Shown here piece by piece: positions 1 through 24,554 of a stretch of 64,000 nt of DNA. A model generated the notes under the pieces. That model worked only from the letters and a program-made list of their open reading frames with translations, was not told the DNA's origin and made no database searches. Origin of the DNA: Auanema rhodensis (Eukaryota > Animalia > Nematoda); NCBI GenBank assembly GCA_964057225.1, contig OZ059896.1:3844001-3908000 (forward strand). The letters run 5' to 3'. The position numbers and the translations under genes were made by a program. Within the stretch, counting starts at the first letter, position 1, and the number at the start of each line of letters is the position of its first letter.

Positions 1-104
1 CAATGACTTGATATAACTTTCTTTTGTATCCTGTTCATGGAATGAATAATTATATACTGTAGTATAATTTGTACATCTCTTGATAATTGTTTGTTCTTAT
101 TTGT
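1..104 (-). repeat. Sat-A diverged edge monomer fragment (T-rich orientation), identical to 1837-1940
   Basis: caatgacttgatataactttcttttgtatcc...tgtttgttcttatttgt matches 1837-1940 base for base in direct orientation, including rare diverged positions (aatgaataattatatactgtag). Confidence 0.9.
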
Positions 105-1134
105 TATCCATGAACAGGATACGAAAGAAAGTTATAACAAGTCATTGAAAAATTAAGTATTAAAAACAAAAAAAAAGTATCAAGAAGCATTTTCAGTAAG
201 AAAACATGAAGAAATTTTAACAAATACAAATAACAATGAGAAAATTATCAAGAGATGCATAACGTATTATAGAGTATCAGTAAACATTTAAAATATGAAC
301 AGGTTTCAAAAAAAGTAATATCAATTCATGGGAAAGTATTAAAAGCAGAGAAGAAGTATCAAGAAGGATTTTCAGTAAGAAAACATGAAGAAATTTTAAC
401 AAATACAAAGAAGAATGAGAAAATTATCAAGAGATATATAACGTACTATAGAGTATCAGTAAACATTTTAAATATGAACAGGTTTCAAAAAAAGTTATAA
501 CAAGTCATGGTAAAATCAAGTTTTAAAAGCAAAGAAGAAGTATCAAGAAGGATTTTCAGCAAGAAAACATGAAGAAATTTTAACAAATACAAAGAAGAAT
601 GAGAAAATTATCGAAAGATGTACAAATTATACTAGAGTATCCGTAAACATTTAAAATATGAACAGGTTTCAACAAAAGTAATATCAAGTCATGATAAAAT
701 CAAGTATTAAAAACAAAAAAAAAGTATCAAGAAGCATTTTCAGTAAGAAAACAGGAAGAAATTTTAACAAATACAAAACAGAATGACAAAATTATCGAAA
801 GATGTACAAAGTATACTAGAGTATCAGTAAACATTTAAAATATGAACAGGTTTCAACAAAAGTAAAATCAAGTCATGATAAAATCAAGTATTAAAAACAA
901 AAAAAAAGTATCAAGAAGCATTTTCAGTAAGAAAACAGGAAGAAATTTTAACAAATACAAAAAAGAATGAGAAAATTATCAAGAGATGTACAAAATATAC
1001 TAGAGTAAAATATTATTTATTCCATGAACATGATACGAAAGAAAGTTATAACAAGTCATGGTAAAATCAAGTATTAAAAACAAAAAAAAGTATCAAGAAG
1101 CATATTCAGTAGGAAAACATGAAGAAATTTTAAC
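105..1134 (+). repeat. Sat-A satellite block, A-rich orientation, ~5.6 monomers of 179-184 bp
   Basis: Recurring aagtatcaagaag(g/c)attttcagtaagaaaacatgaagaaattttaacaaatac motif at ~180-bp spacing; ends abruptly at ...gaaattttaac. Confidence 0.95.
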
Positions 1135-1207
1135 TTTGTTCGCAAATAAACAGTTGTTTATGTTATTCTTATCGTTTATATAAAATTTAAATATACATTT
1201 CTAGAAT

Positions 1208-1333
1208 TGAGCGGCAAAATTAAGCGCCAATATGCTTGGTGGCGATTACAATGGGTTTTTGCGCGGTGACCTCTACAGCACTAGTATAGAACGGAGATGC
1301 TAGGGTTACTATTCAACACACAGCTTGATCAGC
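1208..1333 (+). promoter_or_regulatory. Putative histone H4 promoter and 5' leader, copy 1 (TATA-like TATAGAA at 1285-1291)
   Basis: Locally GC-richer segment with a CCAAT (gcgccaat) and a TATA-like element 49 nt upstream of the H4-like ATG; copy 2 has TATATAA at the same position. Activity is inferred, not shown. Confidence 0.5.
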
Positions 1334-1378
1334 ATGTCTGAACGTGGTAAAGGAGGAAAAGGTCTTGAACTTATATGA
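1334..1378 (+). pseudogene. H4: Truncated histone H4 5' fragment, copy 1 (MSERGKGGKGLELI*)
   Basis: atg tct gaa cgt ggt aaa gga gga aaa ggt ctt gaa matches the H4 N-terminus MSGRGKGGKGLG at 10/12 residues; both differences are GGA>GAA. GKGL distinguishes H4 from H2A. Homology is lost after codon 11-12 and a TGA follows at codon 15. Confidence 0.85.
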
Positions 1379-1702
1379 TTGAATAATAAAATAGTGATTG
1401 ACTTATCTGTGCTATGTGCTTGTTGTTGATTAGAAGTTGAAGTAATGATGCTGACTACAACCGCTCTTTCTTTTTTTTAAAATGATATGATTGTTTAGAT
1501 TTTCATTGCTTGCTTATGCTATTTTGAAAATTTGAATATTCTTAGTGTTGTATTTTTTTAAATTTTTATTTTTTCTCTTTTTTTTTCATATTTATACTTA
1601 TATATATAAATATAATGTATATATTGAGAGATTTAGCTAACTAGTTAATATATTAGCATTTGTACAGTTCGGCTTTCATTGACGTTAGGAATGTGGGCGT
1701 GG

Positions 1703-2369
1703 TTTATTTACTCTAGTATACTCTATACATCTCCTGATAATTGTTTGATCTTATTTATATTTCTTGAAAATTCTTCACATTTTCTTATTGAAAGTGCTTC
1801 TTGATATTTCTTATTTGCTTTTATTATTTGATTTTACAATGACTTGATATAACTTTCTTTTGTATCCTGTTCATGGAATGAATAATTATATACTGTAGTA
1901 TAATTTGTACATCTCTTGATAATTGTTTGTTCTTATTTGTATTTGTAGAAATTTTCCAACACAAAATGCTTCTTAACACTTTTTCTTTGTTTTTAATACT
2001 TGATTTTACCATGACATGATATAACTTTCTTTCGTATCCTGCTCATGGAATAAATAATAGTTTACTCTAGTATACTCTGTACATCTCCTGAAAATTTTCT
2101 CATTCTACTTTGTATTCTTTAAAAATTCTTCATGTTTTCTTACTGAAAATACTTCTTGATACTTCTTCTTTGCTTTTAAAACTTGATTTTATCATGACTT
2201 GTTATAACTTTTTTTGAAACCTGTTTATATTTAAAATGTTTACTGATACTCTATAGTACGTTATATATCTCTTGATAATTTTCTCATTCTTCTTGGTATT
2301 TGTTAAAATTTTTTTATGTTTTCCTACTGAAGATGCTTCTTGATACTTTTTTTTGTTTTTAATACTTGA
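1703..2369 (-). repeat. Sat-A block, T-rich orientation, ~3.6 monomers; most diverged next to the cassette
   Basis: tactctagtatac...catctc..gataatt...cttcttgatac motifs; degenerate variants at 1703-2000 grade into consensus-like monomers. Confidence 0.9.
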
Positions 2370-4043
2370 AGCATTTTCAGTAAGAAAACATGAAGAAATT
2401 TTAACAAATACAAAGAAGAATGAGAAAATTATCAAGAGATGTACAAAGTATACTAGAGTAAACTATTATTTTATCCATGAACAGGATACGAAAGAAAGTT
2501 ATATCAAGTCATTGAAAAATCAAGTATTAAAAACAAAGAAAAAGTATCAAGAAGCATTTTCAGTAAGAAAACATGAAGAAATTTTAAAGAATACAATTAA
2601 GAATGAGAAAATTATCAAGAGATGTACAAAGTATACTAGAGTAAATAATTATTTTATCCATGAACAAGATACGAAAGAAAGTAATATCAAGTCATGATAA
2701 AATCAAGTATTAAAAACAAAGAAGAAGTATTAAGAAGGATTTTCAATAAGAAAACATGAAGAAATTTTAACAAATACAAATAAGAATGAGAAAATTATCA
2801 AGAGATGTATAACATATTATAGAGTATCAGTAAACATTTAAAATATGAACAGGTTTCAAAAAAAGTAATATCAATTCATGGGTAAGTATTAAAAGCAGAG
2901 AAGAAGTATCAAGAAGGATTTTCAGTAAGAAAACATGAAGAAATTTTAACAAATACAAAGAAGAATGAAAAAATTATCAAGAGATGCATAACGTATTATA
3001 GAGTATCAGTAAACATTTAAAATATGAACAGGTTTCAAAAAAAGTAATATCATTTCATGGGGAAGTATTAAAAGCAAAGAAGAAGTATCAAGAAGGATTT
3101 TCAATAAGAAAACATGAAGAAATTTTAACAAATACAAAGAAGAATGAAAAAATTATCAAGAGATGCATAACGTATTATAGAGTATCAGTAAACATTTAAA
3201 ATATGAACAGATTTCAAAAAAAGTAATATCATTTCATGGGGAAGTATTAAAAACAAAAAAAAGTATCAAGAAGCATTTTCAGTAAGATAACATGAAGAAA
3301 TTTCAACAAATACAAAAAAGAATGAGAAAATTATCGAAAGATGCATAACATATTATAGAGTATCAGTAAACATTTGGAATATGAACAGGTTTCAAAAAAA
3401 GTAATATCAATTCATGGGGAAGTATTAAAAGCAGAGAAGAAGTATCAAGAAGGATTTTCAGTAAGAAAACATGAAGAAATTTTAACAAATACAAAGAAGA
3501 ATGAAAAAATTATCAAGAGATGCATAACGTATTATAGAGTATCAGTAAACATTTAAAATATGAACAGATTTCGAAAAAAGTAATATCATTTCATGGGGAA
3601 GTATTAAAAGCAAAGAAGAAGTATCAAGAAGGATTTTCAATAAGAAAACATGAAGAAATTTTAACAAATACAAAGAAGAATGAAAAAATTATCAAGAGAT
3701 GCATAACGTATTATAGAGTATCAGTAAACATTTAAAATATGAACAGGTTTCAAAAAAAGTAATATCATTTCATGGGGAAGTATTAAAAGCAAAGAAGAAG
3801 TATCAAGAAGGATTTTCAATAAGAAAACATGAAGAAATTTTAACAAATACAAAGAAGAATGAAAAAATTATCAAGAGATGCATAACGTATTATAGAGTAT
3901 CAGTAAACATTTAAAATATGAACAGGTTTCAAAAAAAGTAATATCATTTCATGGGGAAGTATTAAAAGCAAAGAAGAAGTATCAAGAAGGATTTTCAATA
4001 AGAAAACATGAAGAAATTTCAACAAATACAAATAAGAATGAAA
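2368..4043 (+). repeat. Sat-A block, A-rich orientation, ~9 monomers (183-bp type then mostly 179-bp type)
   Basis: Periods measured directly: 183 bp (2431 to 2614) and 179 bp (3542 to 3721). Confidence 0.95.
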
Positions 4044-4046
4044 GAA

Positions 4047-7000
4047 CCTTCTTGATACTTCTTCTTTGCATTTAAAACTTGATTTTACCATGACTTGTTA
4101 TAACTTTTTTTGAAACCTGTTCATATTTAAAATGTTTACTGATACTCTATAGTACGTTATATATCTCTTGATAATTTTCTCATTCTTATTTGTATTTGTT
4201 GAAATTTCTTCATGTTTTCTTATTGAAAATCCTTCTTGTTACTTCTTCTTTGCTTTTAATACTTCCCCATGAAATGATATTACCTTTTTTGAAACCTGTT
4301 CATATTTTAAATGTTTACTGATACTCTATAATATGTTATACATCTCTTGATAATTTTCTCATTCTTATTTGTATTTGTTGAAATTTCTTCATGTTATCTT
4401 ACTGAAAATGCTTCTTGATACTTTTTTTTGTTTTTAATACTTGATTTTACCTTGACTTGATATTACTTTCTTTCGTATCATGTTCATGGAAGAAATAATA
4501 GTTTACTCTAGTATACTTTGTACATCTCTTGATAATTTTCTCATTCTTATTTGTATTTGTTGAAATTTCTTCATGTTTTCTTATTGAAAATCCTTCTTGA
4601 TACTTCTTCTTCGCTTTTAATACTTCCCCATGAAATGATATTACTTTTTTTGAAACCTGTTCATATTTTAAATGTTTACTGATACTCTATTATACGTTAT
4701 GCATCTCTTGATAATTTTTTCATTCTTCTTTGTATTTGTTAAAATTTCTTCATGTTTTCTTACTGAAAATCCTTCTTGATACTTCTTCTCTGCTTTTAAT
4801 ACTTCCCCATGAATTGATATTACTTTTTTTGAAACCTGTTCATATTTCAAATGTTTACTGATACTCTATAATATGTTATGCATCTTTCGATAATTTTCTC
4901 ATTCTTTTTTGTATTTGTTAAAATTTCTTCATGTTTTCTTACTGAAAATCCTTCTTGATACTTCTTCTTTGCTTTTAAAACTTGATTTTACCATGATTTG
5001 TTATAACTTTTTTTGAAACCTGTTCATATTTTAAATGTTTACTGATACTCTATAATACGTTATGCATCTCTTGATAATTTTTTCATTCTTCTTTGTATTT
5101 GTTAAAAATTTCTTCATGTTTTCTTACTGAAAATCCTTCTTGATACTTCTTCTCTGCTTTTAATACTTCCCCATGAATTGATATTACTTTTTTTGAAACC
5201 TGTTCATATTTCAAATGTTTACTGATACTCTATAATATGTTATGCATCTTTCGATAATTTTCTCATTCTTTTTTGTATTTGTTAAAATTTCTTCATGTTT
5301 TCTTACTGAAAATCCTTCTTGATACTTCTTCTTTTCTTTTAAAACTTGATTTTACCATGACTTGTTATAACTTTTTTTGAAACCTGTTCATATTTAAAAT
5401 GTTTACTGATACTCTATAAAACGTTATATATCTCTTGATAATTTTCTCATTCTTATTTGTATTTGTTGAAATATCTTCATGTTTTCTTATTGAAAATCCT
5501 TCTTGATACTTCTTCTTTGCTTTTAAAACTTGATTTTACCATGACTTGTTATAACTTTTTTTGAAACCTGTTTATATTTAAAATGTTTACTGATACTCTA
5601 TAGTACGTTATATATCTCTTGATAATTTTCTCATTCTTATTTGTATTTGTTGAAATTTCTTCATGTTTTCTTATTGAAAATCCTTCTTGATACTTCTTCT
5701 TTGCTTTTAATACTTCCCCATGAAATGATATTACTTTTTTCGAAATCTGTTCATATTTTAAATGTTTACTGATACTCTATAATACGTTATGCATCTCTTG
5801 ATAATTTTTTCATTCTTCTTTGTATTTGTTAAAATTTCTTCATGTTTTCTTACTGAAAATCCTTCTTGATACTTCTTCTTTGCTTTTAAAACTTGATTTT
5901 ACCATGACTTGTTATAACTTTTTTTGAAACCTGTTCATATTTAAAATGTTTACTGATACTCTATAGTACGTTATATATCTCTTGATAATTTTCTCATTCT
6001 TCTGTGTATTTGTTAAAATTTCTTCATGTTTTCCTACTGAAGATGCTTCTTGATACTTTTTTTTGTTTTTAATACTTGATTTTACCATGACTTGTTATAA
6101 CTTTCTTTCGTATCATGTTCATGGAATAAATAATATTTTACTCTAGTATATTTTGTACATCTCTTGATAATTTTCTCATTCTTTTTTGTATTTGTTAAAA
6201 TTTCTTCCTGTTTTCTTACTGAAAATGCTTCTTGATACTTTTTTTTTGTTTTTAATACTTGATTTTATCATGACTTGATTTTACTTTTGTTGAAACCTGT
6301 TCATATTTTAAATGTTTACTGATACTCTAGTATACTTTGTACATCTTTCGATAATTTTGTCATTCTTTTTTGTATTTGTTAAAATTTCTTCATGTTTTCT
6401 TACTGAAAATCCTTCTTGATACTTCTTCTTTGCTTTTAAAACTTGATTTTACCATGACTTGTTATAACTTTTTTTGAAACCTGTTCATATTTAAAATGTT
6501 TACTGATACTCTATAGTACGTTATATATCTCTTGATAATTTTCTCATTCTTATTTGTATTTGTTAAAATTTCTTCATGTTTTCTTACTGAAAATGCTTCT
6601 TGATACTTTTTTTTGTTTTTAAAACTTGATTTTATCATGACTTGATATTACTTTCTTTCGTATCTTGTTCATGTAGTAAATAATTATTTACTCTAGTATA
6701 CTTTGTACATTTCTTGATAATTTTCTCATTCTTCTTTGTATTCTTAAAAATTTCTTCATGTTTTCTTACTGAAAATCCTTCTTGATACTTCTTCTTTGCT
6801 TTTAAAACTCGATTTTCCCATGAATTGATATTACTTTTTTTGAAACCTGTTCATATTTTAAATGTTTACTGATACTCTATTATACGTTATGCATCTCTTG
6901 ATAATTTTTTCATTCTTCTTTGTATTTGTTGAAATTTCTTCATGTTATCTTACTGAAAATGCTTCTTGATACTTTTTTTTGTTTTTAATACTTGATTTTA

Positions 7001-10000
7001 CCTTGACTTGATATTACTTTCTTTCGTATCATGTTCATGGAATAAATAATAGTTTACTCTAGTATACTTTGTACATCTCTTGATAATTTTCTCATTCTTA
7101 TCTGTATTTGTTAAAATTTCTTCATGTTTTCTTACTGAAAATCCTTCTTGATACTTCTTCTTCGCTTTTAATACTTCCCCATGAAATGATATTACCTTTT
7201 TTGAAACCTGTTCATATTTTAAATGTTTACTGATACTCTATAATATGTTATACATCTCTTGATAATTTTCTCATTCTTATTTGTATTTGTTGAAATTTCT
7301 TCATGTTATCTTACTGAAAATGCTTCTTGATACTTTTTTTTGTTTTTAATACTTGATTTTACCTTGACTTGATATTACTTTTTTTCGTATCATGTTCATG
7401 GAATAAATAATAGTTTACTCTAGTATACTTTGTACATCTCTTGATAATTTTCTCATTCTTATTTGTATTTGTTGAAATTTCTTCATGTTTTCTTATTGAA
7501 AATCCTTCTTGATACTTCTTCTTCGCTTTTAATACTTCCCCATGAAATGATATTACTTTTTTTGAAACCTGTTCATATTTTAAATGTTTACTGATACTCT
7601 ATTATACGTTATGCATCTCTTGATAATTTTTTCATTCTTCTTTGTATTTGTTAAAATTTCTTCATGTTTTCTTACTGAAAATCCTTCTTGATACTTCTTT
7701 CTGCTTTTAATACTTCCCCATGAATTGATATTACTTTTTTTGAAACCTGTTCATATTTCAAATGTTTACTGATACTCTATAATATGTTATGCATCTTTCG
7801 ATAATTTTCTCATTCTTTTTTGTATTTGTTAAAATTTCTTCATGTTTTCTTACTGAAAATCCTTCTTGATACTTCTTCTTTTCTTTTAAAACTTGATTTT
7901 ACCATGACTTGTTATAACTTTTTTTGAAACCTGTTCATATTTAAAATGTTTACTGATACTCTATAGTACGTTATATATCTCTTGATAATTTTCTCATTCT
8001 TATTTGTATTTGTTGAAATATCTTCATGTTTTCTTATTGAAAATCCTTCTTGATACTTCTTCTTTGCTTTCAAAACTTGATTTTACCATGATTTGTTATA
8101 ACTTTTTTTGAAACCTGTTCATATTTTAAATGTTTACTGATACTCTATAATACGTTATGCATCTCTTGATAATTTTTTCATTCTTCTTTGTATTTGTTAA
8201 AAATTTCTTCATGTTTTCTTACTGAAAATCCTTCTTGATACTTCTTCTCTGCTTTTAATACTTCCCCATGAATTGATATTACTTTTTTTGAAACCTGTTC
8301 ATATTTCAAATGTTTACTGATACTCTATAATATGTTATGCATCTTTCGATAATTTTCTCATTCTTTTTTGTATTTGTTAAAATTTCTTCATGTTTTCTTA
8401 CTGAAAATCCTTCTTGATACTTCTTCTTTTCTTTTAAAACTTGATTTTACCATGACTTGTTATAACTTTTTTTGAAACCTGTTCATATTTAAAATGTTTA
8501 CTGATACTCTATAGTACGTTATATATCTCTTGATAATTTTCTCATTCTTATTTGTATTTGTTGAAATATCTTCATGTTTTCTTATTGAAAATCCTTCTTG
8601 ATACTTCTTCTTTGCTTTTAAAACTTGATTTTACCATGACTTGTTATAACTTTTTTTGAAACCTGTTTATATTTAAAATGTTTACTGATACTCTATAGTA
8701 CGTTATATATCTCTTGATAATTTTCTCATTCTTATTTGTATTTGTTGAAATTTCTTCATGTTTTCTTATTGAAAATCCTTCTTGATACTTCTTCTTTGCT
8801 TTTAATACTTCCCCATGAAATGATATTACTTTTTTCGAAATCTGTTCATATTTTAAATGTTTACTGATACTCTATAATACGTTATGCATCTCTTGATAAT
8901 TTTTTCATTCTTCTTTGTATTTGTTAAAATTTCTTCATGTTTTCTTACTGAAAATCCTTCTTGATACTTCTTCTCTGCTTTTAATACTTCCCCATGAATT
9001 GATATTACTTTTTTTGAAACCTGTTCATATTCCAAATGTTTACTGATACTCTATAATATGTTATGCATCTTTCGATAATTTTCTCATTCTTTTTTGTATT
9101 TGTTAAAATTTCTTCATGTTTTCTTACTGAAAATCCTTCTTGATACTTCTTCTTTGCTTTTAAAACTTGATTTTACCATGACTTGTTATAACTTTTTTTG
9201 AAACCTGTTCATATTTAAAATGTTTACTGATACTCTATAGTACGTTATATATCTCTTGATAATTTTCTCATTCTTCTGTGTATTTGTTAAAATTTCTTCA
9301 TGTTTTCCTACTGAAGATGCTTCTTGATACTTTTTTTTGTTTTTAATACTTGATTTTACCATGACTTGTTATAACTTTCTTTCGTATCATGTTCATGGAA
9401 TAAATAATATTTTACTCTAGTATATTTTGTACATCTCTTGATAATTTTCTCATTCTTTTTTGTATTTGTTAAAATTTCTTCCTGTTTTCTTACTGAAAAT
9501 GCTTCTTGATACTTTTTTTTTGTTTTTAATACTTGATTTTATCATGACTTGATTTTACTTTTGTTGAAACCTGTTCATATTTTAAATGTTTACTGATACT
9601 CTAGTATACTTTGTACATCTTTCGATAATTTTGTCATTCTGTTTTGTATTTGTTAAAATTTCTTCATGTTTTCTTACTGAAAATGCTTCTTGATACTTTT
9701 TTTTTGTTTTAATACTTGATTTTATCATGACTTGATTTTACTTTTGTTGAAACCTGTTCATATTTTAAATGTTTACTGATACTCTAGTATACTTTGTACA
9801 TCTTTCGCTAATTTTCTCATTCTTCTTTGTATTTGTTAAAATTTCTTCATGTTTTCTTACTGAAAATCCTTCTTGATACTTCTTCTTTGCTTTTAAAACT
9901 TGATTTTACCATGACTTGTTATAACTTTTTTTGAAACCTGTTCATATTTAAAATGTTTACTGATACTCTATAGTACGTTATGCATCTCTTGATAATTTTC

Positions 10001-13000
10001 TCATTCTTCTTTGTATTCTTAAAAATTTCTTCATGTTTTCTTACTGAAAATCCTTCTTGATACTTCTTCTTTGCTTTTAAAACTCGATTTTCCCATGAAT
10101 TGATATTACTTTTTTTGAAACCTGTTCATATTTAAAATGTTTACTGATACTCTATAGTACGTTATATATCTCTTGATAATTTTCTCATTCTTCTGTGTAT
10201 TTGTTAAAATTTCTTCATGTTTTCCTACTGAAGATGCTTCTTGATACTTTTTTTTGTTTTTAATACTTGATTTTACCATGACTTGTTATAACTTTCTTTC
10301 GTATCATGTTCATGGAATAAATAATATTTTACTCTAGTATATTTTGTACATCTCTTGATAATTTTCTCATTCTTTTTTGTATTTGTTAAAATTTCTTCCT
10401 GTTTTCTTACTGAAAATGCTTCTTGATACTTTTTTTTTGTTTTTAATACTTGATTTTATCATGACTTGATTTTACTTTTGTTGAAACCTGTTCATATTTT
10501 AAATGTTTACTGATACTCTAGTATACTTTGTACATCTTTCGATAATTTTGTCATTCTTTTTTGTATTTGTTAAAATTTCTTCATGTTTTCTTACTGAAAA
10601 TCCTTCTTGATACTTCTTCTTTGCTTTTAAAACTTGATTTTACCATGACTTGTTATAACTTTTTTTGAAACCTGTTCATATTTAAAATGTTTACTGATAC
10701 TCTATAGTACGTTATATATCTCTTGATAATTTTCTCATTCTTATTTGTATTTGTTAAAATTTCTTCATGTTTTCTTACTGAAAATGCTTCTTGATACTTT
10801 TTTTTGTTTTTAAAACTTGATTTTATCATGACTTGATATTACTTTCTTTCGTATCTTGTTCATGTAGTAAATAATTATTTACTCTAGTATACTTTGTACA
10901 TTTCTTGATAATTTTCTCATTCTTCTTTGTATTCTTAAAAATTTCTTCATGTTTTCTTACTGAAAATCCTTCTTGATACTTCTTCTTTGCTTTTAAAACT
11001 CGATTTTCCCATGAATTGATATTACTTTTTTTGAAATATGTTCATATTTTAAATGTTTACTGATACTCTATAATACGTTATACATTTCTTGATAATTTTC
11101 TCATTCTTCTTTGTATTTGTTAAAATTTCTTCATGTTTTCTTATTGAAAATCCTTCTTGATACTTCTTCTTTGTTTTTAATACTTGATTTTATCATGACT
11201 TGATATTACTTTCTTTCGTATCTTGTTCATGTAGTAAATAATTATTTACTCTAGTATACTTTGTACATTTCTTGATAATTTTCTCATTCTTATTTGTATT
11301 TGTTAAAATTTCTTCATGTTTTCTTACTGAAAATGCTTCTTGATACTTTTTTTTTGTTTTTAATACTTGATTTTACCATGACTTGTTATAACTTTCTTTC
11401 GTATCCTGTTCATGGAATAAATAATAGTTTACTCTAGTATACTTTGTACATTTCTTGATAATTTTCTCATTCTTATTTGTATTTGTTAAAATTTCTTCAT
11501 GTTTTCTTACTGAAAATCCTTCTTGATACTTCTTCTTTGCTTTTAAAACTTGATTTTACCATGACTTGTTATAACTTTTTTTGAAACCTGTTCATATTTA
11601 AAATGTTTACTGATACTCTATAGTACGTTATATATCTCTTGATAATTTTCTCATTCTTATTTGTATTTGTTAAAATTTCTTCATGTTTTCTTACTGAAAA
11701 TGCTTCTTGATACTTTTTTTTGTTTTTAATACTTGATTTTACCATGACTTGTTATAACTTTCTTTCGTATCCTGTTCATGGAATAAATAATAGTTTACTC
11801 TTGTATACTTTGTACATCTCCTGATAATTTTCTCATTCTTCTTTGTATTCTTGAAAATTTCTTCATGTTTTCTTACTGAAAATCCTTCTTGATACTTCTT
11901 CTTTGCTTTTAAAACTCGATTTTCCCATGAATTGATATTACTTTTTTTGAAACCTGTTCATATTTTAAATGTTTACTGATACTCTATAATACGTTATACA
12001 TTTCTTGATAATTTTCTCATTCTTCTTTGTATTTGTTAAAATTTCTTCATGTTTTCTTATTGAAAATCCTTCTTGATACTTCTTCTTTGCTTTTAATACT
12101 TCCCCATGAAATGATATTACTTTTTTTGAAACCTGTTCATATTTTAAATGTTTACTGATACTCTATAATATGTTATGCATCTTTCGATAATTTTCTCATT
12201 CTTTTTTGTATTTGTTAAAATTTCTTCATGTTTTCTTACTGAAAATCCTTCTTGATACTTCTTCTTTGCTTTTAAAACTTGATTTTACCATGACTTGTTA
12301 TAACTTTTTTTGAAACCTGTTCATATTTAAAATGTTTACTGATACTCTATAATACGTTATGCATCTCTTGATAATTTTTTCATTCTTCTTTGTATTTGTT
12401 AAAATTTCTTCATGTTTTCTTACTGAAAATCCTTCTTGATACTTTTTTTTTGTTTTTAATACTTGATTTTATCATGACTTGATATTACTTTTGTTGAAAC
12501 CTGTTCATATTTTAAATGTTTACTGATACTCTAGTATAATTTGTACATCTTTCGATAATTTTCTCATTCTTCTTTGTATTTGTTAAAATTTCTTCATGTT
12601 TTCTTGCTGAAAATCCTTCTTGATACTTCTTCTTTGCTTTTAAAACTTGATTTTACCATGACTTGTTATAACTTTTTTTGAAACCTGTTCATATTTAAAA
12701 TGTTTACTGATACTCTATAGTACGTTATATATCTCTTGATAATTTTCTCATTCTTCTTTGTATTTGTTAAAATTTCTTCATGTTTTCTTACTGAAAATCC
12801 TTCTTGATACTTCTTCTTTGCTTTTAAAACTTGATTTTACCATGACTTGTTATAACTTTTTTTGAAACCTGTTCATATTTAAAATGTTTACTGATACTCT
12901 ATAATACGTTATGCATCTCTTGATAATTTTTTCATTCTTCTTTGTATTTGTTAAAATTTCTTCATGTTTTCTTACTGAAAATCCTTCTTGATACTTCTTC

Positions 13001-14084
13001 TTTGCTTTTAAAACTTGATTTTACCATGACTTGTTATAACTTTTTTTGAAACCTGTTCATATTCCAAATGTTTACTGATACTCTATAATATGTTATGCAT
13101 CTTTCGATAATTTTCTCATTCTTTTTTGTATTTGTTAAAATTTCTTCATGTTTTCTTACTGAAAATCCTTCTTGATACTTCTTCTTTGCTTTTAAAACTT
13201 GATTTTACCATGACTTGTTATAACTTTTTTTGAAACCTGTTCATATTCCAAATGTTTACTGATACTCTATAATATGTTATGCATCTTTCGATAATTTTCT
13301 CATTCTTTTTTGTATTTGTTAAAATTTCTTCATGTTTTCCTACTGAAGATGCTTCTTGATACTTTTTTTTGTTTTTAATACTTGATTTTACCATGACTTG
13401 TTATAACTTTCTTTCGTATCATGTTCATGGAATAAATAATATTTTACTCTAGTATATTTTGTACATCTCTTGATAATTTTCTCATTCTTTTTTGTATTTG
13501 TTAAAATTTCTTCCTGTTTTCTTACTGAAAATGCTTCTTGATACTTTTTTTTTGTTTTTAATACTTGATTTTATCATGACTTGATTTTACTTTTGTTGAA
13601 ACCTGTTCATATTTTAAATGTTTACTGATACTCTAGTATACTTTGTACATCTTTCGATAATTTTGTCATTCTGTTTTGTATTTGTTAAAATTTCTTCATG
13701 TTTTCTTACTGAAAATGCTTCTTGATACTTTTTTTTTGTTTTAATACTTGATTTTATCATGACTTGATTTTACTTTTGTTGAAACCTGTTCATATTTTAA
13801 ATGTTTACTGATACTCTAGTATACTTTGTACATCTTTCGCTAATTTTCTCATTCTTCTTTGTATTTGTTAAAATTTCTTCATGTTTTCTTACTGAAAATC
13901 CTTCTTGATACTTCTTCTTTGCTTTTAAAACTTGATTTTACCATGACTTGTTATAACTTTTTTTGAAACCTGTTCATATTTAAAATGTTTACTGATACTC
14001 TATAGTACGTTATGCATCTCTTGATAATTTTTTCATTCTTCTTTGTATTTGTTAAAATTTCTTCATGTTTTCTTACTTCTTCTT
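4047..14084 (-). repeat. Main Sat-A array, T-rich orientation, ~55 monomers of 179/183/184 bp with multi-monomer duplications
   Basis: Continuous tandem repeat, e.g. 184-bp period at 12657 to 12841; shared diagnostic variants at offsets 4191 and 4032. Confidence 0.97.
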
Positions 14085-14552
14085 AAGTCATTGTAAAATC
14101 AAATAATAAAAGCAAAGAAGAAATATCAAGAAGCACTTTCAATAAGAAAATGTGAAGAATTTTCAACAAATATAAATAAGATCAAACAATTATCAGGAGA
14201 TGTATAGAGTATACTAGAGTAAATAAACCACGCCCACATTCCTAACGTCAATGAAAGCCGAACTGTACAAATGCTAATATATTAACTAGTTAGCTAAATC
14301 TCTCAATATATACATTATATTTATATATATAAGTATAAATATGAAAAAAAAAAGAGAAAAAATAAAAATTAAAAAAAATACAACACTAAGAATATTCAAA
14401 TTTTCAAAATAGCATAAGCAAGCAATGAAAATCTAAACAATCATATCATTTTAAAAAAAAGAAAGAGCGGTTGTAGTCAGCATCATTACTTCAACTTCTA
14501 ATCAACAACAAGCACATAGCACAGATAAGTCAATCACTATTTTATTATTCAA

Positions 14553-14597
14553 TCATATAAATTCAAGACCTTTTCCTCCTTTACCACGTTCAGACAT
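14553..14597 (-). pseudogene. H4: Truncated histone H4 5' fragment, copy 2 (MSERGKGGKGLEFI*)
   Basis: Reverse complement of tcatataaattcaagaccttttcctcctttaccacgttcagacat; same H4 N-terminal match as copy 1. Confidence 0.85.
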
Positions 14598-14723
14598 GCT
14601 GATCAAGCTGTGTGTTGAATAGTAACCCTAGCATCTCCGTTATATACTAGTGCTGTAGAGGTCACCGCGCAAAAACCCATTGTAATCGCCACCAAGCATA
14701 TTGGCGCTTAATTTTGCCGCTCA
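14598..14723 (-). promoter_or_regulatory. Putative histone H4 promoter, copy 2, with TATATAA box (14640-14646)
   Basis: Minus strand reads gcactagTATATAAcggagatgctagggttactattcaacacacagcttgatcagcATG; TATA-to-ATG spacing fits a short histone 5' UTR. Confidence 0.55.
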
Positions 14724-14796
14724 ATTCTAGAAATGTATATTTAAATTTTATATAAACGATAAGAATAACATAAACAACTGTTTATTTGCGAACAAA

Positions 14797-15030
14797 CGTG
14801 GAATAGAAACATGTGAGGCATTAGATATGATCACTGTTGTTGTTATCAACATGAAAGCATAATTAATGAAATTCATAAAAAAAAATAGAGATGGATATGG
14901 AGTATCAAAGATAGGGATTCTCCTTTACATAAGAGCGAAACATATCATATCAATTATCATTACATAGCAAAAAAAGACAAGACAGACACAGTATTATATT
15001 ATAAATCATTATGAATACATCAAATTTAAA
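14797..15030. other. Unique AT-rich spacer, probably a histone-cluster intergenic region between a histone 3' end and the H4 promoter
   Basis: Single copy in the window; bounded by a histone stem-loop on one side and the H4 promoter on the other, both on the minus strand. Confidence 0.5.
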
Positions 15031-15056
15031 TGTGGCCCTAAAGAGGGCCGTTGGGT
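15029..15056 (-). promoter_or_regulatory. Replication-dependent histone mRNA 3' stem-loop (SLBP-binding, histone3 element), C. elegans-type CUUU loop
   Basis: Minus strand ACCCAAC-GGCCCT-CTTT-AGGGCC-ACATT: 6-bp stem starting GG, 4-nt loop, C/A-rich 5' flank and ACA 3' flank; stem-loop core at 15034-15049. Confidence 0.92.
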
Positions 15057-15404
15057 TGTTGATTAGAAGTTGAAGTAAATCTGATAACACAGATCGACGC
15101 AGCTTAAAAATCCGCATCGAATGCACTATACTACATGGAGAAACGCTCAATACAAAAATTAGTTATGATCGTTTGAAAAATGATGCATTAGTGTATGTTG
15201 AGTTTCCATGTACACTCAACATTGCTTCCAAAAACATTTTGACAAAAAGTTTCCCGAAAAATTTCAAAATAATTTCACAAAAAGTAGATGTTTTTAGATT
15301 CCTTTTTTCAAGACAAAAACGATGGACATTGTTATTCAACAAAAAAATTAATTCTTCACGGTGAAAATCGAGGATATAAGTGTGAACCTATATCAGTTGA
15401 TATC

Positions 15405-15471
15405 TCGGTGCATTTTTAAGCTAGCGCAAATCTGATAACACAGATCGACGCAGCTTAAAAATCCGCATCGA
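15405..15471 (+). other. 67-nt imperfect hairpin present once per Sat-B monomer (first complete instance)
   Basis: TCGGTGC-ATTTTTAAGCT-a-GCG-caa-ATCTG-ataaca-CAGAT-cga-CGC-AGCTTAAAAAT-cc-GCATCGA; about 26 pairs including one G.U. Confidence 0.8.
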
Positions 15472-16129
15472 ATGCACTATACTACATGGAGAAACGCTCA
15501 ATACAAAAATTAGTTATGATCGTTTGAAAAATGATGCATTAGTGTATGTTGAGTTTCCATGTACACTCAACATTGCTTCCAAAAACATTTTGACAAAAAG
15601 TTTCCCGAAAAATTTCAGAATAATTTCACAAAAAGTAGATGTTTTTAGATTCCTTTTTTCAAGACAAAGACGATGGACATTGTTATTCAACGAAAAAATT
15701 AATTCTTCAGGGTGAAAATCGAGGATATAAGTGTGAACTTATATCAGTTGATATCTCGGTGCATTTTTAAGCTAGCGCAAATCTGATAACACAGATCGAC
15801 GCAGCTTAAAAATCCGCATCGAATGCACTATACTACATTAAGAAAAGCTTAATACAAAAATTAGTTATGATCGTTTGAAAAATGATGCATTAGTGTATGT
15901 TGAGTTTCCATGTACACTCAACATTGCTTCCAAAAACATTTTGACAAAAATTTTCCCGAAAAATTTCAAAATAATTTCACAAAAAGTAGATGTTTTTAGA
16001 TTCCTTTTTTCAAGACAAAGACGATGGACATTGTTATTCAACAAAAAAATTAATTCTTCACGGTGAAAATCGAGGATATAAGTGTGAACCTATATCAGTT
16101 GATATCTCGGTGCATTTTCAAGCTAGCGC

Positions 16130-19100
16130 AAATCTGATAACACAGATCGACGCAGCTTAAAAATCCGCATCGAATGCACTATACTACATTAAGAAAAGCT
16201 TAATACAAAAATTAGTTATGATCGTTTGAAAAATGATGCATTAGTGTATGTTGAGTTTCCATGTACACTCAACATTGCTTCCAAAAACATTTTGACAAAA
16301 ATTTTCCCGAAAAATTTCAAAATAATTTCACAAAAAGTAGATGTTTTTAGATTCCTTTTTTCAAGACAAAGACGATGGACATTGTTATTCAACAAAAAAA
16401 TTAATTCTTCACGGTGAAAATCGAGGATATAAGTGTGAACCTATATCAGTTGATATCTCGGTGCATTTTCAAGCTAGTGCAAATCTGATAACACAGATCG
16501 ACGCAGCTTAAAAATCCGCATCGAATGCACTATACTACATTAAGAAAAGCTTAATACAAAAATTAGTTATGATCGTTTGAAAAATGATGCATTAGTGTAT
16601 GTTGAGTTTCCATGTACACTCAACATTGCTTCCAAAAACATTTTGACAAAAATTTTCCCGAAAAATTTCAAAATAATTTCACAACAAGTAGATGTTTTTA
16701 GATTCCTTTTTTCAAGACAAAGACGATGGACATTGTTATTCAACAAAAAAATTAATTCTTCACGGTGAAAATCGAGGATATAAGTGTGAACCTATATCAG
16801 TTGATATCTCGGTGCATTTTCAAGCTAGCGCAAATCTGATAACACAGATCGACGCAGCTTAAAAATCCGCATCGAATGCACTATACTACATTAAGAAAAG
16901 CTTAATACAAAAATTAGTTATGATCGTTTGAAAAATGATGCATTAGTGTATGTTGAGTTTCCATGTACACTCAACATTGCTTCCAAAAACATTTTGACAA
17001 AAATTTTCCCGAAAAATTTCAAAATAATTTCACAAAAAGTAGATGTTTTTAGATTCCTTTTTTCAAGACAAAGACGATGGACATTGTTATTCAACAAAAA
17101 AATTAATTCTTCACGGTGAAAATCGAGGATATAAGTGTGAACCTATATCAGTTGATATCTCGGTGCATTTTCAAGCTAGTGCAAATCTGATAACACAGAT
17201 CGACGCAGCTTAAAAATCCGCATCGAATGCACTATACTACATTAAGAAAAGCTTAATACAAAAATTAGTTATGATCGTTTGAAAAATGATGCATTAGTGT
17301 ATGTTGAGTTTCCATGTACACTCAACATTGCTTCCAAAAACATTTTGACAAAAATTTTCCCGAAAAATTTCAAAATAATTTCACAACAAGTAGATGTTTT
17401 TAGATTCCTTTTTTCAAGACAAAGACGATGGACATTGTTATTCAACAAAAAAAATTAATTCTTCAGGGTGAAAATCGAGGATATAAGTGTGAACTTATAT
17501 CAGTTGATATCTCGGTGCATTTTCAAGCTAGCGCAAATCTGATAACACAGATCGACGCAGCTTAAAAATCCGCATCGAATGCACTATACTACATTAAGAA
17601 AAGCTTAATACAAAAATTAGTTATGATCGTTTGAAAAATGATGCATTAGTGTATGTTGAGTTTCCATGTACACTCAACATTGCTTCCAAAAACATTTTGA
17701 CAAAAATTTTCCCGAAAAATTTCAAAATAATTTCACAAAAAGTAGATGTTTTTAGATTCCTTTTTTCAAGACAAAGACGATGGACATTGTTATTCAACAA
17801 AAAAATTAATTCTTCAGGGTGAAAATCGAGGATATAAGTGTGAACTTATATCAGTTGATATCTCGGTGCATTTTCAAGCTAGCGCAAATCTGATAACACA
17901 GATCGACGCAGCTTAAAAATCCGCATCGAATGCACTATACTACATTAAGAAAAGCTTAATACAAAAATTAGTTATGATCGTTTGAAAAATGATGCATTAG
18001 TGTATGTTGAGTTTCCATGTACACTCAACATTGCTTCCAAAAACATTTTGACAAAAATTTTCCCGAAAAATTTCAAAATAATTTCACAAAAAGTAGATGT
18101 TTTTAGATTCCTTTTTTCAAGACAAAGACGATGGACATTGTTATTCAACAAAAAAATTAATTCTTCAGGGTGAAAATCGAGGATATAAGTGTGAACTTAT
18201 ATCAGTTGATATCTCGGTGCATTTTCAAGCTAGCGCAAATCTGATAACACAGATCGACGCAGCTTAAAAATCCGCATCGAATGCACTATACTACATTAAG
18301 AAAAGCTTAATACAAAAATTAGTTATGATCGTTTGAAAAATGATGCATTAGTGTATGTTGAGTTTCCATGTACACTCAACATTGCTTCCAAAAACATTTT
18401 GACAAAAATTTTCCCGAAAAATTTCAAAATAATTTCACAAAAAGTAGATGTTTTTAGATTCCTTTTTTCAAGACAAAGACGATGGACATTGTTATTCAAC
18501 AAAAAAATTAATTCTTCACGGTGAAAATCGAGGATATAAGTGTGAACCTATATCAGTTGATATCTCGGTGCATTTTCAAGCTAGCGCAAATCTGATAACA
18601 CAGATCGACGCAGCTTAAAAATCCGCATCGAATGCACTATACTACATTAAGAAAAGCTTAATACAAAAATTAGTTATGATCGTTTGAAAAATGATGCATT
18701 AGTGTATGTTGAGTTTCCATGTACACTCAACATTGCTTCCAAAAACATTTTGACAAAAATTTTCCCGAAAAATTTCAAAATAATTTCACAAAAAGTAGAT
18801 GTTTTAGATTCCTTTTTTCAAGACAAAGACGATGGACATTGTTATTCAACAAAAAAATTAATTCTTCAGGGTGAAAATCGAGGATATAAGTGTGAACTTA
18901 TATCAGTTGATATCTCGGTGCATTTTTAAGCTAGCGCAAATCTGATAACACAGATCGACGCAGCTTAAAAATCCACATCGAATGCACTATACTACATTGG
19001 GAAACACTCAATACAAAAATTAGTTATGATCGTTTGAAAAATGATGCATTAGTGTATGTTGAGTTTCCATGTACACTCAACATTGCTTCCAAAAACATTT

Positions 19101-22100: not shown

Positions 22101-24554
22101 CTGATAACACAGATCGACGCAGCTTAAAAATCCGCATCGAATGCACTATACTACATTAAGAAAAGCTTAATACAAAAATTAGTTATGATCGTTTGAAAAA
22201 TGATGCATTAGTGTATGTTGAGTTTCCATGTACACTCAACATTGCTTCCAAAAACATTTTGACAAAAATTTTCCCGAAAAATTTCAAAATAATTTCACAA
22301 CAAGTAGATGTTTTTAGATTCCTTTTTTCAAGACAAAGACGATGGACATTGTTATTCAACAAAAAAATTAATTCTTCACGGTGAAAATCGAGGATATAAG
22401 TGTGAACCTATATCAGTTGATATCTCGGTGCATTTTCAAGCTAGCGCAAATCTGATAACACAGATCGACGCAGCTTAAAAATCCGCATCGAATGCACTAT
22501 ACTACATTAAGAAAAGCTTAATACAAAAATTAGTTATGATCGTTTGAAAAATGATGCATTAGTGTATGTTGAGTTTCCATGTACACTCAACATTGCTTCC
22601 AAAAACATTTTGACAAAAATTTTCCCGAAAAATTTCAAAATAATTTCACAAAAAGTAGATGTTTTTAGATTCCTTTTTTCAAGACAAAGACGATGGACAT
22701 TGTTATTCAACAAAAAAATTAATTCTTCACGGTGAAAATCGAGGATATAAGTGTGAACCTATATCAGTTGATATCTCGGTGCATTTTCAAGCTAGTGCAA
22801 ATCTGATAACACAGATCGACGCAGCTTAAAAATCCGCATCGAATGCACTATACTACATTAAGAAAAGCTTAATACAAAAATTAGTTATGATCGTTTGAAA
22901 AATGATGCATTAGTGTATGTTGAGTTTCCATGTACACTCAACATTGCTTCCAAAAACATTTTGACAAAAATTTTCCCGAAAAATTTCAAAATAATTTCAC
23001 AACAAGTAGATGTTTTTAGATTCCTTTTTTCAAGACAAAGACGATGGACATTGTTATTCAACAAAAAAAATTAATTCTTCAGGGTGAAAATCGAGGATAT
23101 AAGTGTGAACTTATATCAGTTGATATCTCGGTGCATTTTCAAGCTAGCGCAAATCTGATAACACAGATCGACGCAGCTTAAAAATCCGCATCGAATGCAC
23201 TATACTACATTAAGAAAAGCTTAATACAAAAATTAGTTATGATCGTTTGAAAAATGATGCATTAGTGTATGTTGAGTTTCCATGTACACTCAACATTGCT
23301 TCCAAAAACATTTTGACAAAAATTTTCCCGAAAAATTTCAAAATAATTTCACAAAAAGTAGATGTTTTTAGATTCCTTTTTTCAAGACAAAGACGATGGA
23401 CATTGTTATTCAACAAAAAAATTAATTCTTCAGGGTGAAAATCGAGGATATAAGTGTGAACTTATATCAGTTGATATCTCGGTGCATTTTCAAGCTAGCG
23501 CAAATCTGATAACACAGATCGACGCAGCTTAAAAATCCGCATCGAATGCACTATACTACATTAAGAAAAGCTTAATACAAAAATTAGTTATGATCGTTTG
23601 AAAAATGATGCATTAGTGTATGTTGAGTTTCCATGTACACTCAACATTGCTTCCAAAAACATTTTGACAAAAATTTTCCCGAAAAATTTCAAAATAATTT
23701 CACAAAAAGTAGATGTTTTTAGATTCCTTTTTTCAAGACAAAGACGATGGACATTGTTATTCAACAAAAAAATTAATTCTTCAGGGTGAAAATCGAGGAT
23801 ATAAGTGTGAACTTATATCAGTTGATATCTCGGTGCATTTTCAAGCTAGCGCAAATCTGATAACACAGATCGACGCAGCTTAAAAATCCGCATCGAATGC
23901 ACTATACTACATTAAGAAAAGCTTAATACAAAAATTAGTTATGATCGTTTGAAAAATGATGCATTAGTGTATGTTGAGTTTCCATGTACACTCAACATTG
24001 CTTCCAAAAACATTTTGACAAAAATTTTCCCGAAAAATTTCAAAATAATTTCACAAAAAGTAGATGTTTTTAGATTCCTTTTTTCAAGACAAAGACGATG
24101 GACATTGTTATTCAACAAAAAAATTAATTCTTCACGGTGAAAATCGAGGATATAAGTGTGAACCTATATCAGTTGATATCTCGGTGCATTTTCAAGCTAG
24201 CGCAAATCTGATAACACAGATCGACGCAGCTTAAAAATCCGCATCGAATGCACTATACTACATTAAGAAAAGCTTAATACAAAAATTAGTTATGATCGTT
24301 TGAAAAATGATGCATTAGTGTATGTTGAGTTTCCATGTACACTCAACATTGCTTCCAAAAACATTTTGACAAAAATTTTCCCGAAAAATTTCAAAATAAT
24401 TTCACAAAAAGTAGATGTTTTTAGATTCCTTTTTTCAAGACAAAGACGATGGACATTGTTATTCAACAAAAAAATTAATTCTTCAGGGTGAAAATCGAGG
24501 ATATAAGTGTGAACTTATATCAGTTGATATCTCGGTGCATTTTTAAGCTAGCGC
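16130..24554 (+). repeat. 8-mer higher-order repeat of Sat-B (~2808 bp, 3 copies)
   Basis: The cacaacaag variant recurs in units with ORF starts 16577, 19385, 22193 (spacing 2808), each followed two units later by a unit with the same variant plus an A8 tract; the gctagtgc variant follows the same phase. Confidence 0.9.

What the first reader, a model, noticed from the sequence alone, without database searches (positions are those of the whole stretch)
1135..15078. Histone-gene regulatory parts wired to two satellites: convergent H4 promoters around Sat-A and a histone stem-loop at the edge of Sat-B
Seen: the only non-satellite DNA in 64 kb derives from a histone locus that has lost its coding sequence but kept its cis-elements. 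Two H4 promoter/start fragments face each other (+ at 1334, - at 14597) across ~12 kb of Sat-A. A perfect histone stem-loop lies on the minus strand immediately downstream of the Sat-B array. Established: replication-dependent histone promoters fire in S phase, the stem-loop/SLBP system defines histone mRNA 3' ends and stability, and satellite transcripts and dsRNA can feed heterochromatin pathways. Inference: this could be a cell-cycle-coupled satellite transcription unit, giving both-strand Sat-A RNA and SLBP-bound Sat-B RNA. The simpler alternative is passive debris of a histone cluster overrun by satellites.
Basis: partly seen in the sequence, partly recalled or inferred. Interest (0 to 1): 0.8.

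Follow-up and report, generated by a model that had tools for sequence, protein, structure and literature searches.

The report
Dead histone fragment at satellite seams
A small broken piece of a nematode histone gene cluster sits where two satellite repeat arrays meet and was copied in mirror image along with them. It is faintly transcribed, but nothing shows that it controls satellite RNA.

Summary
The first 34 nt of a histone H4 gene (11 codons plus 1 nt), with its 5' flank, occur at 1334-1367 (+) and 14564-14597 (-). A histone mRNA 3' hairpin lies at 15031-15052 (-), 24 nt from the 351-bp Sat-B array, and it matches the C. elegans consensus exactly.

The convergent arrangement is not a design. 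The two H4 pieces are arms of a 712-bp inverted duplication (1135-1845 vs 14796-14085, 99.2% identical). The intervening 184-bp Sat-A changes polarity three times between the arms and five times within 1-14221. A third copy lies just before the window, and scan notes place the same relic at eight or more other Sat-A/Sat-B seams over about 3.4 Mb.

Three small runs that are probably RNA hold contigs over 14385-14688 and 14120-14305. They hold none over 14689-15017 and none over Sat-B, although Sat-B is overwhelmingly abundant in a DNA run. The contigs reach 23-42 nt upstream of the proposed TATA box. No RNA is seen ending at the hairpin.

Best reading: a passively co-amplified histone-cluster relic with weak, possibly residual, promoter-region transcription into Sat-A. 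The scan reached the same conclusion on sister loci. Interest is low.

The parts
1135..1845 (+). Left arm of the inverted duplication. It holds the H4 5' flank, H4 codons 1-11, 54 nt of unknown origin, the 24-nt repeat, the AT-rich tail and 137 nt of Sat-A. It lacks the spacer and hairpin.
   Evidence: blastn: 1135-1845 vs 14796-14085, 99.16% over 712 columns. There are six differences.
1135..1333 (+). H4 5' flank (putative promoter), left copy. CCAAT at 1227-1231, TATAGAA at 1285-1291, upstream TATATAAAA at 1177-1185.
   Evidence: Motif positions. Promoter function was not tested.
1334..1367 (+). H4 codons 1-11 plus 1 nt, left copy. The ORF stops after 14 codons.
1422..1445 (+). 24-nt repeat, copy in the left arm.
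   Evidence: Identical to 15055-15078 and reverse-complementary to 14486-14509.
14085..14796 (-). Right arm of the inverted duplication.
14564..14597 (-). H4 codons 1-11 plus 1 nt, right copy. The break with live H4 lies directly after 14564.
   Evidence: DNA-run contigs continue past 14564 with letters that read GKG, as in live H4 (table 7).
14598..14796 (-). H4 5' flank, right copy. TATATAA at 14640-14646, CCAAT at 14700-14704, TATATAAAA at 14746-14754.
   Evidence: RNA contigs end at 14669-14688 inside this flank.
14486..15078 (-). 593-bp histone relic unit boxed by a perfect 24-bp inverted repeat (14486-14509 and 15055-15078). In order: hairpin, spacer, H4 flank, H4 start, 54 nt of unknown origin.
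   Evidence: Scan notes s1-373260 and s1-373218 describe the same unit elsewhere.
14797..15030 (-). Spacer between the hairpin and the H4 flank. It is present only at the Sat-B seam, has no coding relic, and no RNA contig of this copy lies on it.
15031..15052 (-). Histone mRNA 3' hairpin with flanks. The stem-loop is 15034-15049 with loop CUUU, the nematode type.
   Evidence: A contig whose loose end reads ...ERA-stop (H3-type) is identical over 15018-15057.
14222..14485 (.). AT-rich non-satellite tail of unknown origin. The left-arm copy is 1446-1708.
   Evidence: No similarity to Sat-A or Sat-B and no Pfam or Rfam match.
3..1134 (.). Sat-A: block 3-104 (T-rich polarity) then 110-1134 (opposite polarity). 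Bases 1-104 are identical to 1837-1940.
1709..14221 (.). Sat-A core between the cassettes. Blocks 1709-2367 (+), 2370-4038 (-), 4044-14075 (+) and 14085-14221 (-), joined by near-palindromic junctions.
15077..63997 (+). Sat-B array: 351-bp unit, 139 copies, 98% alike, one polarity.
   Evidence: It is hugely abundant in DNA run X1 and absent from runs X2-X4.

Best explanation
This is a non-functional relic of a nematode replication-dependent histone cluster. It comprises the 3' hairpin of an upstream histone gene (probably H3), the intergenic spacer, the H4 5' flank and the first 11 H4 codons.

The relic became the seam between a 351-bp and a 184-bp satellite and has since been copied passively with them. 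Fold-back or inverted duplication of the seam produced the two near-identical arms, and so the 'convergent' H4 pieces. Segmental duplication of the whole Sat-B / island / Sat-B domain then spread the relic to many sites on the chromosome.

The hairpin and promoter motifs look intact because the copies are young (99.2% alike), not because they are shown to be under selection.

Weak transcription is seen over the relic and the first ~100 nt of Sat-A. One end of it lies about 70-125 nt upstream of the H4 ATG. This is most simply residual or adventitious promoter-region activity, or read-through, with no demonstrated consequence.

Shown: the anatomy, the homology, the duplication and the presence of contigs in probable RNA runs. 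Inferred: the order of events, the lack of function and the direction of the RNA.
For: - The arms 1135-1845 and 14796-14085 are 99.16% identical, with six differences, one of them inside the TATA motif.
- Sat-A has five polarity switches with near-palindromic junctions.
- Bases 1-104 equal 1837-1940, which shows a further direct duplicate.
- The H4 piece is 33/34 identical to ten complete H4 genes, but carries G3E and stops after 14 codons.
- DNA-run contigs continue into true H4 coding exactly where the relic breaks.
- The hairpin equals the C. elegans consensus.
- An H3-type contig is identical to the window for only 40 nt and then diverges.
- Sat-B is absent from runs X2-X4 while its summed depth is 1-3e7 in DNA run X1. 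RNA contigs cover 14385-14688 and 14120-14305 only.
- No other coding or RNA-family relic is present.
- Scan notes report the same relic at eight or more other seams, and H2B-derived satellites elsewhere in this genome.
Against: - RNA contigs are concentrated on the H4 relic rather than on the far more abundant satellites, and they stop inside the H4 5' flank. That is what a weakly active relic promoter would give.
- The contigs cross from the cassette into Sat-A.
- DNA-run variants listed at 10% or more fall outside the 14564-14704 H4 core and outside the hairpin. With only 11 variants this is about P=0.05 and was chosen post hoc.
- The recurrence of the unit at every seam could in principle reflect retention.
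Confidence: 0.8

Rival explanations
1. One reading: a cell-cycle-coupled satellite transcription unit. Relic H4 promoters fire convergently into Sat-A and give double-stranded RNA. Minus-strand Sat-B RNA is ended and stabilised at the histone hairpin by the hairpin-binding protein.
For: - Probable RNA contigs cover the relic (14385-14688) and cross into Sat-A (14120-14305), with alleles of both arms represented.
- The hairpin is sequence-perfect.
- The Sat-A polarity switches would make any read-through RNA fold back on itself.
Against: - No Sat-B contig appears in X2-X4, and none of this copy lies over 14689-15017. The only contig on the hairpin is an H3-type contig that diverges from the window after 15057, so nothing is seen reading from Sat-B into the hairpin.
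- RNA contigs extend upstream of the proposed TATA and start site.
- The geometry is explained by inverted duplication.
- No AATCC-type element follows the hairpin at the position conserved in C. elegans; the nearest lies about 110 nt away.
- In C. elegans, histone 3' processing is also reported to involve CSR-1 with antisense small RNAs next to the hairpin (PMC11125478). None are known here.
- Strand, ends and cell-cycle dependence are all untested.
Confidence: 0.07
2. The 593-bp unit (14486-15078) is a non-autonomous DNA transposon of the Pack or MITE type. Its 24-bp terminal inverted repeats captured a histone-cluster fragment and it inserted at the satellite border.
For: A perfect 24-bp inverted repeat bounds the unit exactly. 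TA dinucleotides lie near both ends. Scan note s1-373260 proposed the same idea.
Against: - There is no clear target-site duplication. The flanks read ...ATCA | unit | ATCT....
- The outer end of one repeat is simply where Sat-B begins, with a 2-nt overlap. The other repeat continues into unrelated sequence.
- Every reported copy sits in the same Sat-A/Sat-B context, as segmental duplication predicts and transposition does not.
- The window holds no other copy of the 24-mer at up to 4 mismatches.
- An inversion with staggered breaks would also leave short inverted duplicates.
Confidence: 0.1
3. Assembly artefact: the inverted arms and polarity switches come from chimeric fold-back long reads or a collapsed, mis-joined satellite assembly.
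For: Long satellite regions with palindromic junctions are error-prone to assemble. The short k-mer contigs used here cannot confirm long-range order.
Against: - The two arms differ at six positions. Independent runs carry contigs with the left-arm alleles (X4: 14561 A>G and 14642 A>C) and with the right-arm alleles (X3: 0 mismatches in 304 nt).
- The seams at 14221/14222 and 14796/14797 are covered in independent data.
- The same architecture is reported at several other loci.
Confidence: 0.03

Closest known systems
Replication-dependent histone gene clusters of nematodes (C. elegans his genes; Keall et al. 2007, PMC1924863)
   Same: The hairpin and flanks are identical to the C. elegans strings, including the nematode-specific C at the first loop position. 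The order is an H4 N-terminal coding start preceded by a CCAAT/TATA-type flank, with hairpin, spacer and next gene in sequence.
   Different: There is no histone coding sequence upstream of the hairpin; Sat-B starts 29 nt from the stem. H4 stops after 11 genuine codons. No AATCC or AATAAA elements follow the hairpin at the C. elegans position.
Gene-fragment relics and pseudogene pieces co-amplified at satellite junctions by segmental or inverted duplication (general satellite biology, reviewed in PMC5615363; my own knowledge for the generalisation)
   Same: A unique junction fragment is carried in many near-identical copies together with flanking arrays. Satellite polarity inverts repeatedly, and the junctions are palindromic.
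   Different: Here the hitch-hiking fragment happens to consist of recognisable histone cis-elements, and it is weakly represented in RNA.
Foldback-type elements that seed satellites, such as Tetris in Drosophila virilis (PMC4079207) and Tm1 Mutator/Foldback elements in root-knot nematodes (PMC3169594)
   Same: Inverted repeats are combined with tandem repeats, and there is a link between inverted-repeat structures and satellite growth.
   Different: No transposase is present, no terminal repeats are built of tandem units, and no target-site duplication is seen. The domain is tens to hundreds of kb, far larger than a transposon. These papers were seen only as search hits and were not read in depth.
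Satellite-derived double-stranded or small-RNA heterochromatin loci, such as fission yeast dg/dh repeats (my own knowledge)
   Same: Low-level satellite transcription occurs, and the structure has the potential for double-stranded RNA through convergent promoters or fold-back junctions.
   Different: Here no strand information, no small RNAs and no chromatin data are available. This is only a functional analogy.

Membership tests
Histone mRNA 3' stem-loop (Rfam RF00032) | 6-bp stem, 4-nt loop and conserved flanks, scoring at or above the family's gathering score | tested here: inconclusive
   28.3 bits against a gathering score of 34, E 1.6e-4. The shortfall comes from the nematode CUUU loop and a non-consensus 3' tail. 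The stem is perfect.
Histone mRNA 3' stem-loop (Rfam RF00032) | Identity with the lineage's own histone hairpin | tested here: met
   22/22 with flanks, found once against 0 expected. The same string is tabulated for C. elegans H2A, H2B, H3 and H4 mRNAs. It is 40/40 identical to an H3-type contig of the same organism.
Histone mRNA 3' stem-loop (Rfam RF00032) | Lies in the 3' UTR of a histone coding sequence | tested here: not met
   Upstream on the minus strand are 5 nt, the 24-nt repeat and then Sat-B. No histone ORF or Pfam match is present.
Histone mRNA 3' stem-loop (Rfam RF00032) | RNA 3' ends formed a few nt after the hairpin | tested here: inconclusive
   Only contigs were available, and they cannot show ends. 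No contig of this copy lies on 14689-15017. The only hairpin contig is an H3-type contig that diverges from the window after 15057.
Histone H4 gene | Complete H4 coding sequence (103 aa) | tested here: not met
   Eleven genuine codons with G3E, then 3 unrelated codons and a stop.
Histone H4 gene | Homology of the 5' coding start to H4 | tested here: met
   33/34 nt identical to ten complete H4 genes. DNA-run contigs continue with ...GKG where the relic breaks.
Active replication-dependent histone promoter | Initiation about 25-30 nt downstream of the TATA box, restricted to S phase | tested here: inconclusive
   Probable RNA contigs include 23-42 nt upstream of the TATA at 14640-14646, so at least some RNA does not start at the predicted site. 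No strand, 5'-end or cell-cycle data exist.
Pack-type / MITE DNA transposon | Terminal inverted repeats | tested here: met
   A 24-bp perfect inverted repeat at 14486-14509 and 15055-15078.
Pack-type / MITE DNA transposon | Target-site duplication, and copies in unrelated genomic contexts | tested here: not met
   No direct repeat flanks the unit. All copies known from the window and the scan notes lie at the same Sat-A/Sat-B seam. A genome-wide search was not possible with these tools.
Satellite small-RNA / double-stranded RNA locus | Transcripts from both strands and small RNAs mapping to the satellite | not testable with these tools
   Only unstranded contigs of three small runs were available, and no small-RNA run was offered.

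The most novel reading that the evidence does not exclude
The relic H4 flank keeps enough promoter activity, possibly tied to S phase, to send transcripts from every seam into the Sat-A island. There the fold-back junctions at about 2368, 4041 and 14080 turn them into long hairpin RNA. This would seed small RNAs that mark the recurring Sat-B / island / Sat-B domains of this nematode chromosome. On this reading a histone promoter has been co-opted as the trigger for satellite silencing.
Probability: 0.06. Interest if true: 0.65.

Novelty: new member of a known kind. Interest (0 to 1): 0.2.

Why it matters
Taken as read here, the locus is a tidy example of how a gene-cluster fragment gets trapped at a satellite junction. 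It is then multiplied by inverted and segmental duplication and stays 'perfect' simply because the copies are young. That makes it useful as a marker for reconstructing how these megabase satellite domains grew, but it is not a new mechanism.

It would matter more if the weak RNA over the relic proved to be promoter-driven and to feed small-RNA production over the satellite. The present data do not show that.

Tried and rejected
- **Rfam miRNA-like hits:** the sub-threshold hits at 2314-2393 (mir-392, MIR1512, lsy-6) are only the palindromic Sat-A polarity switch at 2368.
- **Hidden coding relics:** a Pfam scan of the ten longest stop-free frames of 14222-15078 found nothing credible.
- **PDB sequence search:** a search with the 24-aa frame holding the H4 start found nothing, because the query is too short.
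- **Satellites born from the relic:** blastn of the unique DNA against Sat-A and Sat-B, and of Sat-A against Sat-B, gave only chance 8-18-nt matches (E 0.1 or worse). The satellites are therefore not derived from the relic.
- **A second H3 end:** a GAAAGAGCG ('ERA') string next to the inner 24-mer looked like one, but it has no stop, no H3 coding upstream and a different spacing. I take it as coincidence.
- **Literature:** searches for a 351-bp nematode satellite, or for histone-derived satellite junctions in nematodes, found nothing specific.
- **Metagenome scan:** scanning with the H4 start returned only complete H4 genes of unrelated animals with no 5'-flank homology. The relic promoter could therefore not be compared with a live promoter.
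- **Variant positions as a test of constraint:** too few variants and post hoc boundaries, so inconclusive.
- **Run availability:** no run on record as RNA and no raw-read run was offered. Transcript strand and ends could therefore not be read.
Full report
**What is in the sequence**

The window is almost all satellite. A 184-bp AT-rich repeat (Sat-A) fills 3-14221 apart from one insert. A 351-bp repeat (Sat-B, 139 copies, 98% alike) fills 15077-63997. Two stretches are non-satellite: 1135-1708 and 14222-15078.

The 34-nt string that opens a histone H4 gene occurs exactly twice, at 1334-1367 (+) and 14564-14597 (-), with none expected by chance. A metagenome scan with that string returned ten complete H4 genes (MSGRGKGGKGLGKGG...). 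They share 33/34 nt with the relic, and all have Gly (GGA) at codon 3 where the relic has Glu (GAA). They share nothing else with the cassette except the hairpin. None of the ten contigs looked human.

After codon 11 the relic leaves H4 and stops three codons later.

On the minus strand at 15031-15052 lies AACGGCCCTCTTTAGGGCCACA, one match against 0 expected. Rfam Histone3 gives 28.3 bits and E 1.6e-4, below the gathering score of 34. The stem-loop folds with z = -3.7. The same string, with its unusual C at the first loop position, is the one tabulated for C. elegans H2A, H2B, H3 and H4 mRNA ends in PMC1924863. The genome is therefore a nematode's, and other notes of this scan say the same.

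**The anatomy explains the 'convergent' geometry**

The two H4 pieces are not independent. Bases 1135-1845 and 14796-14085 are arms of one inverted duplication, 99.16% identical over 712 columns. They differ at six positions. One of these turns TATATAA (right arm) into TATAGAA (left arm).

The left arm is a truncated copy. It begins abruptly in the H4 5' flank and lacks the 234-bp spacer and the hairpin. Those are present only at the Sat-B seam (14797-15052).

Sat-A is not one array. Relative to the long block it runs + (3-104), - (110-1134), + (1709-2367), - (2370-4038), + (4044-14075) and - (14085-14221). The switches are near-palindromic junctions, with arms of 41-342 nt at 85-95% and spacers of 28-135 nt.

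Bases 1-104 are 104/104 identical to 1837-1940. A scan note places a full 592-letter relic 405 nt before the window. A third copy therefore lies upstream as a direct duplicate of the left arm. The whole domain is roughly mirror-symmetric: Sat-B, relic pointing inward, Sat-A core, relic pointing inward, Sat-B.

Scan notes describe the same relic at Sat-A/Sat-B seams at about -1.88, -1.74, -0.65, +0.12-0.14, +0.82, +1.35 and +1.53 Mb on the same piece. They also describe satellites built from H2B gene starts elsewhere in this genome. I did not verify those loci.

**What the relic is made of**

Read on the minus strand from Sat-B, the unit runs in this order:
- a 24-nt segment (15078-15055);
- the hairpin;
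- a 234-bp spacer;
- about 200 bp of H4 5' flank, with TATATAAAA at 14746-14754, CCAAT at 14700-14704 and TATATAA at 14640-14646;
- H4 codons 1-11;
- 54 nt of unknown origin;
- the reverse complement of the same 24-nt segment (14509-14486);
- a 264-bp AT-rich tail;
- Sat-A.

The unit 14486-15078 (593 bp) is thus boxed by a perfect 24-bp inverted repeat. The unique DNA has no similarity to either satellite, and the satellites have none to each other. No other coding relic or RNA family is present.

In DNA run X1, contigs that match upward from 14564 continue on the other side with letters that read GKG. The live H4 gene therefore continues exactly where the relic breaks (table 7).

In run X4, a 449-nt contig is identical to the window over 15018-15057 only. 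It then runs on with letters that read ...ERA-stop, the H3 C-terminus. The hairpin therefore probably came from an H3 gene lying upstream of H4 in the same orientation. In C. elegans, however, the 32-36 nt around the hairpin are shared by all four histone classes, so this attribution is not firm.

**Transcription**

No run on record as RNA, and no raw-read run, was offered. I laid 1431 bases (14000-15430) on three small runs guessed to be RNA (X2-X4, about 20 Mb of contigs each, one study) and on one DNA run (X1).

Sat-B has a summed depth of 1-3e7 in X1 but no contig at all in X2-X4. So these three runs are not whole-genome DNA, and Sat-B serves as the silent control that the tool asks for.

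In X2-X4, contigs lie in these places:
- 14454-14669, 14385-14688 and 14423-14672, with 0-2 mismatches;
- 14137-14305 and 14120-14302, which cross the cassette/Sat-A seam at 14221/14222;
- generic tandem Sat-A.

The gap at 14306-14384 is low-complexity sequence that the tool skipped. Nothing of this copy lies on 14689-15017. Nothing lies on the hairpin except the H3-type contig, which diverges from the window after 15057.

The contigs carry arm-diagnostic alleles. X4 has the left-arm bases at both 14561 and 14642, X3 has the right-arm bases, and X2 is mixed. Several copies are therefore represented, and both arms exist in independent data.

The upper contig ends (14669, 14672, 14688) lie between the CCAAT and TATA motifs. 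If the RNA is sense, it starts about 70-125 nt upstream of the ATG, perhaps downstream of the upstream TATATAAAA. If it is antisense, it ends there. Contigs cannot tell strand, ends or level. This agrees with what an earlier follow-up found on a sister locus (s1-373189).

**Reading**

The simplest account that fits everything has three steps:
1. A slice of an H3-to-H4 histone cluster became the border between two growing satellites.
2. The border was mirrored by fold-back or inverted duplication, one of many such events in Sat-A.
3. The whole domain was then multiplied by segmental duplication.

The cis-elements look untouched because the copies are young. With 99.2% identity between arms there is no power to see selection, and one of the six differences actually hits the TATA motif.

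The Sat-B/hairpin half of the functional hypothesis finds no support. No Sat-B RNA is seen. The hairpin has no coding sequence or known promoter feeding it. It also lacks the AATCC-type element that follows C. elegans hairpins; the nearest AATCC is about 110 nt away. In C. elegans, 3' processing is further reported to involve CSR-1 with antisense small RNAs beside the hairpin (PMC11125478), and nothing of the kind is known here.

The Sat-A half keeps a small residue. RNA is concentrated on the relic, stops inside the H4 flank and reaches into Sat-A. A weakly active relic promoter region is therefore plausible; I put it near 50% that the RNA is sense and starts in that flank. Any read-through RNA would fold back at the polarity switches, but that is potential only, not evidence.

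**Rivals**

The 24-bp inverted repeat invites a Pack/MITE reading. Against it:
- There is no target-site duplication.
- One repeat end is merely where Sat-B starts, with a 2-nt overlap.
- All known copies share one context.

An inversion with staggered breaks would leave the same mark. An assembly artefact is unlikely, given the arm-specific alleles in independent runs.

**Verdict**

The feature is real and ordinary in kind: a histone-cluster pseudo-fragment co-amplified at satellite seams, with faint transcription of unknown strand. The scan had already reached this conclusion on sister copies (s1-373189, s1-373159, s1-373188). My independent checks on this window agree.

Noticed in passing
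window 1-147 and 1837-1940: Bases 1-104 are 104/104 identical to 1837-1940. Bases 1-41 pair with 107-147 (95%), forming a fold-back junction. This implies that a third cassette copy just upstream of the window is a direct duplicate of the left arm.
   Followed up: partly
window 2314-2393, 4041, 14080: The Sat-A polarity switches are near-palindromes with arms up to 342 nt at 93-95%. The one at 2368 produces spurious sub-threshold Rfam miRNA hits (mir-392, MIR1512, lsy-6).
   Followed up: yes
window 15170-15349 (Sat-B): DNA run X1 holds many contigs that skip about 178-180 nt inside the Sat-B unit, so a shorter Sat-B variant of roughly half a unit exists in the genome.
   Followed up: no
window 15018-15057 (-): A 449-nt contig of run X4 is a live H3-type 3' end (...ERA-stop). 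It matches the window for 40 nt, including 16 nt past the hairpin. That is beyond the 3-6-nt cleavage distance measured in C. elegans, so it is unprocessed or read-through RNA, or that run contains some DNA.
   Followed up: no
window 4039-14077: TRF scores Sat-A almost equally as a 184-bp unit and as a 366-bp dimer (87-88% matches), which suggests a two-unit higher-order repeat.
   Followed up: no
whole window; scan notes over about 3.4 Mb of the same piece: The Sat-B / 14-15-kb Sat-A island / Sat-B domain with histone relics recurs many times along this chromosome piece. Sat-B is enormously abundant in the DNA run. The large-scale organisation of this satellite region may deserve its own look, for example spacing, polarity flips and any link to chromosome biology of a holocentric nematode.
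   Followed up: no
L001 (soil metagenome contig, 31% GC): The H4 gene here is interrupted by an intron after ...RDNIQ, unlike the nine intronless H4 genes found in the same scan.
   Followed up: no
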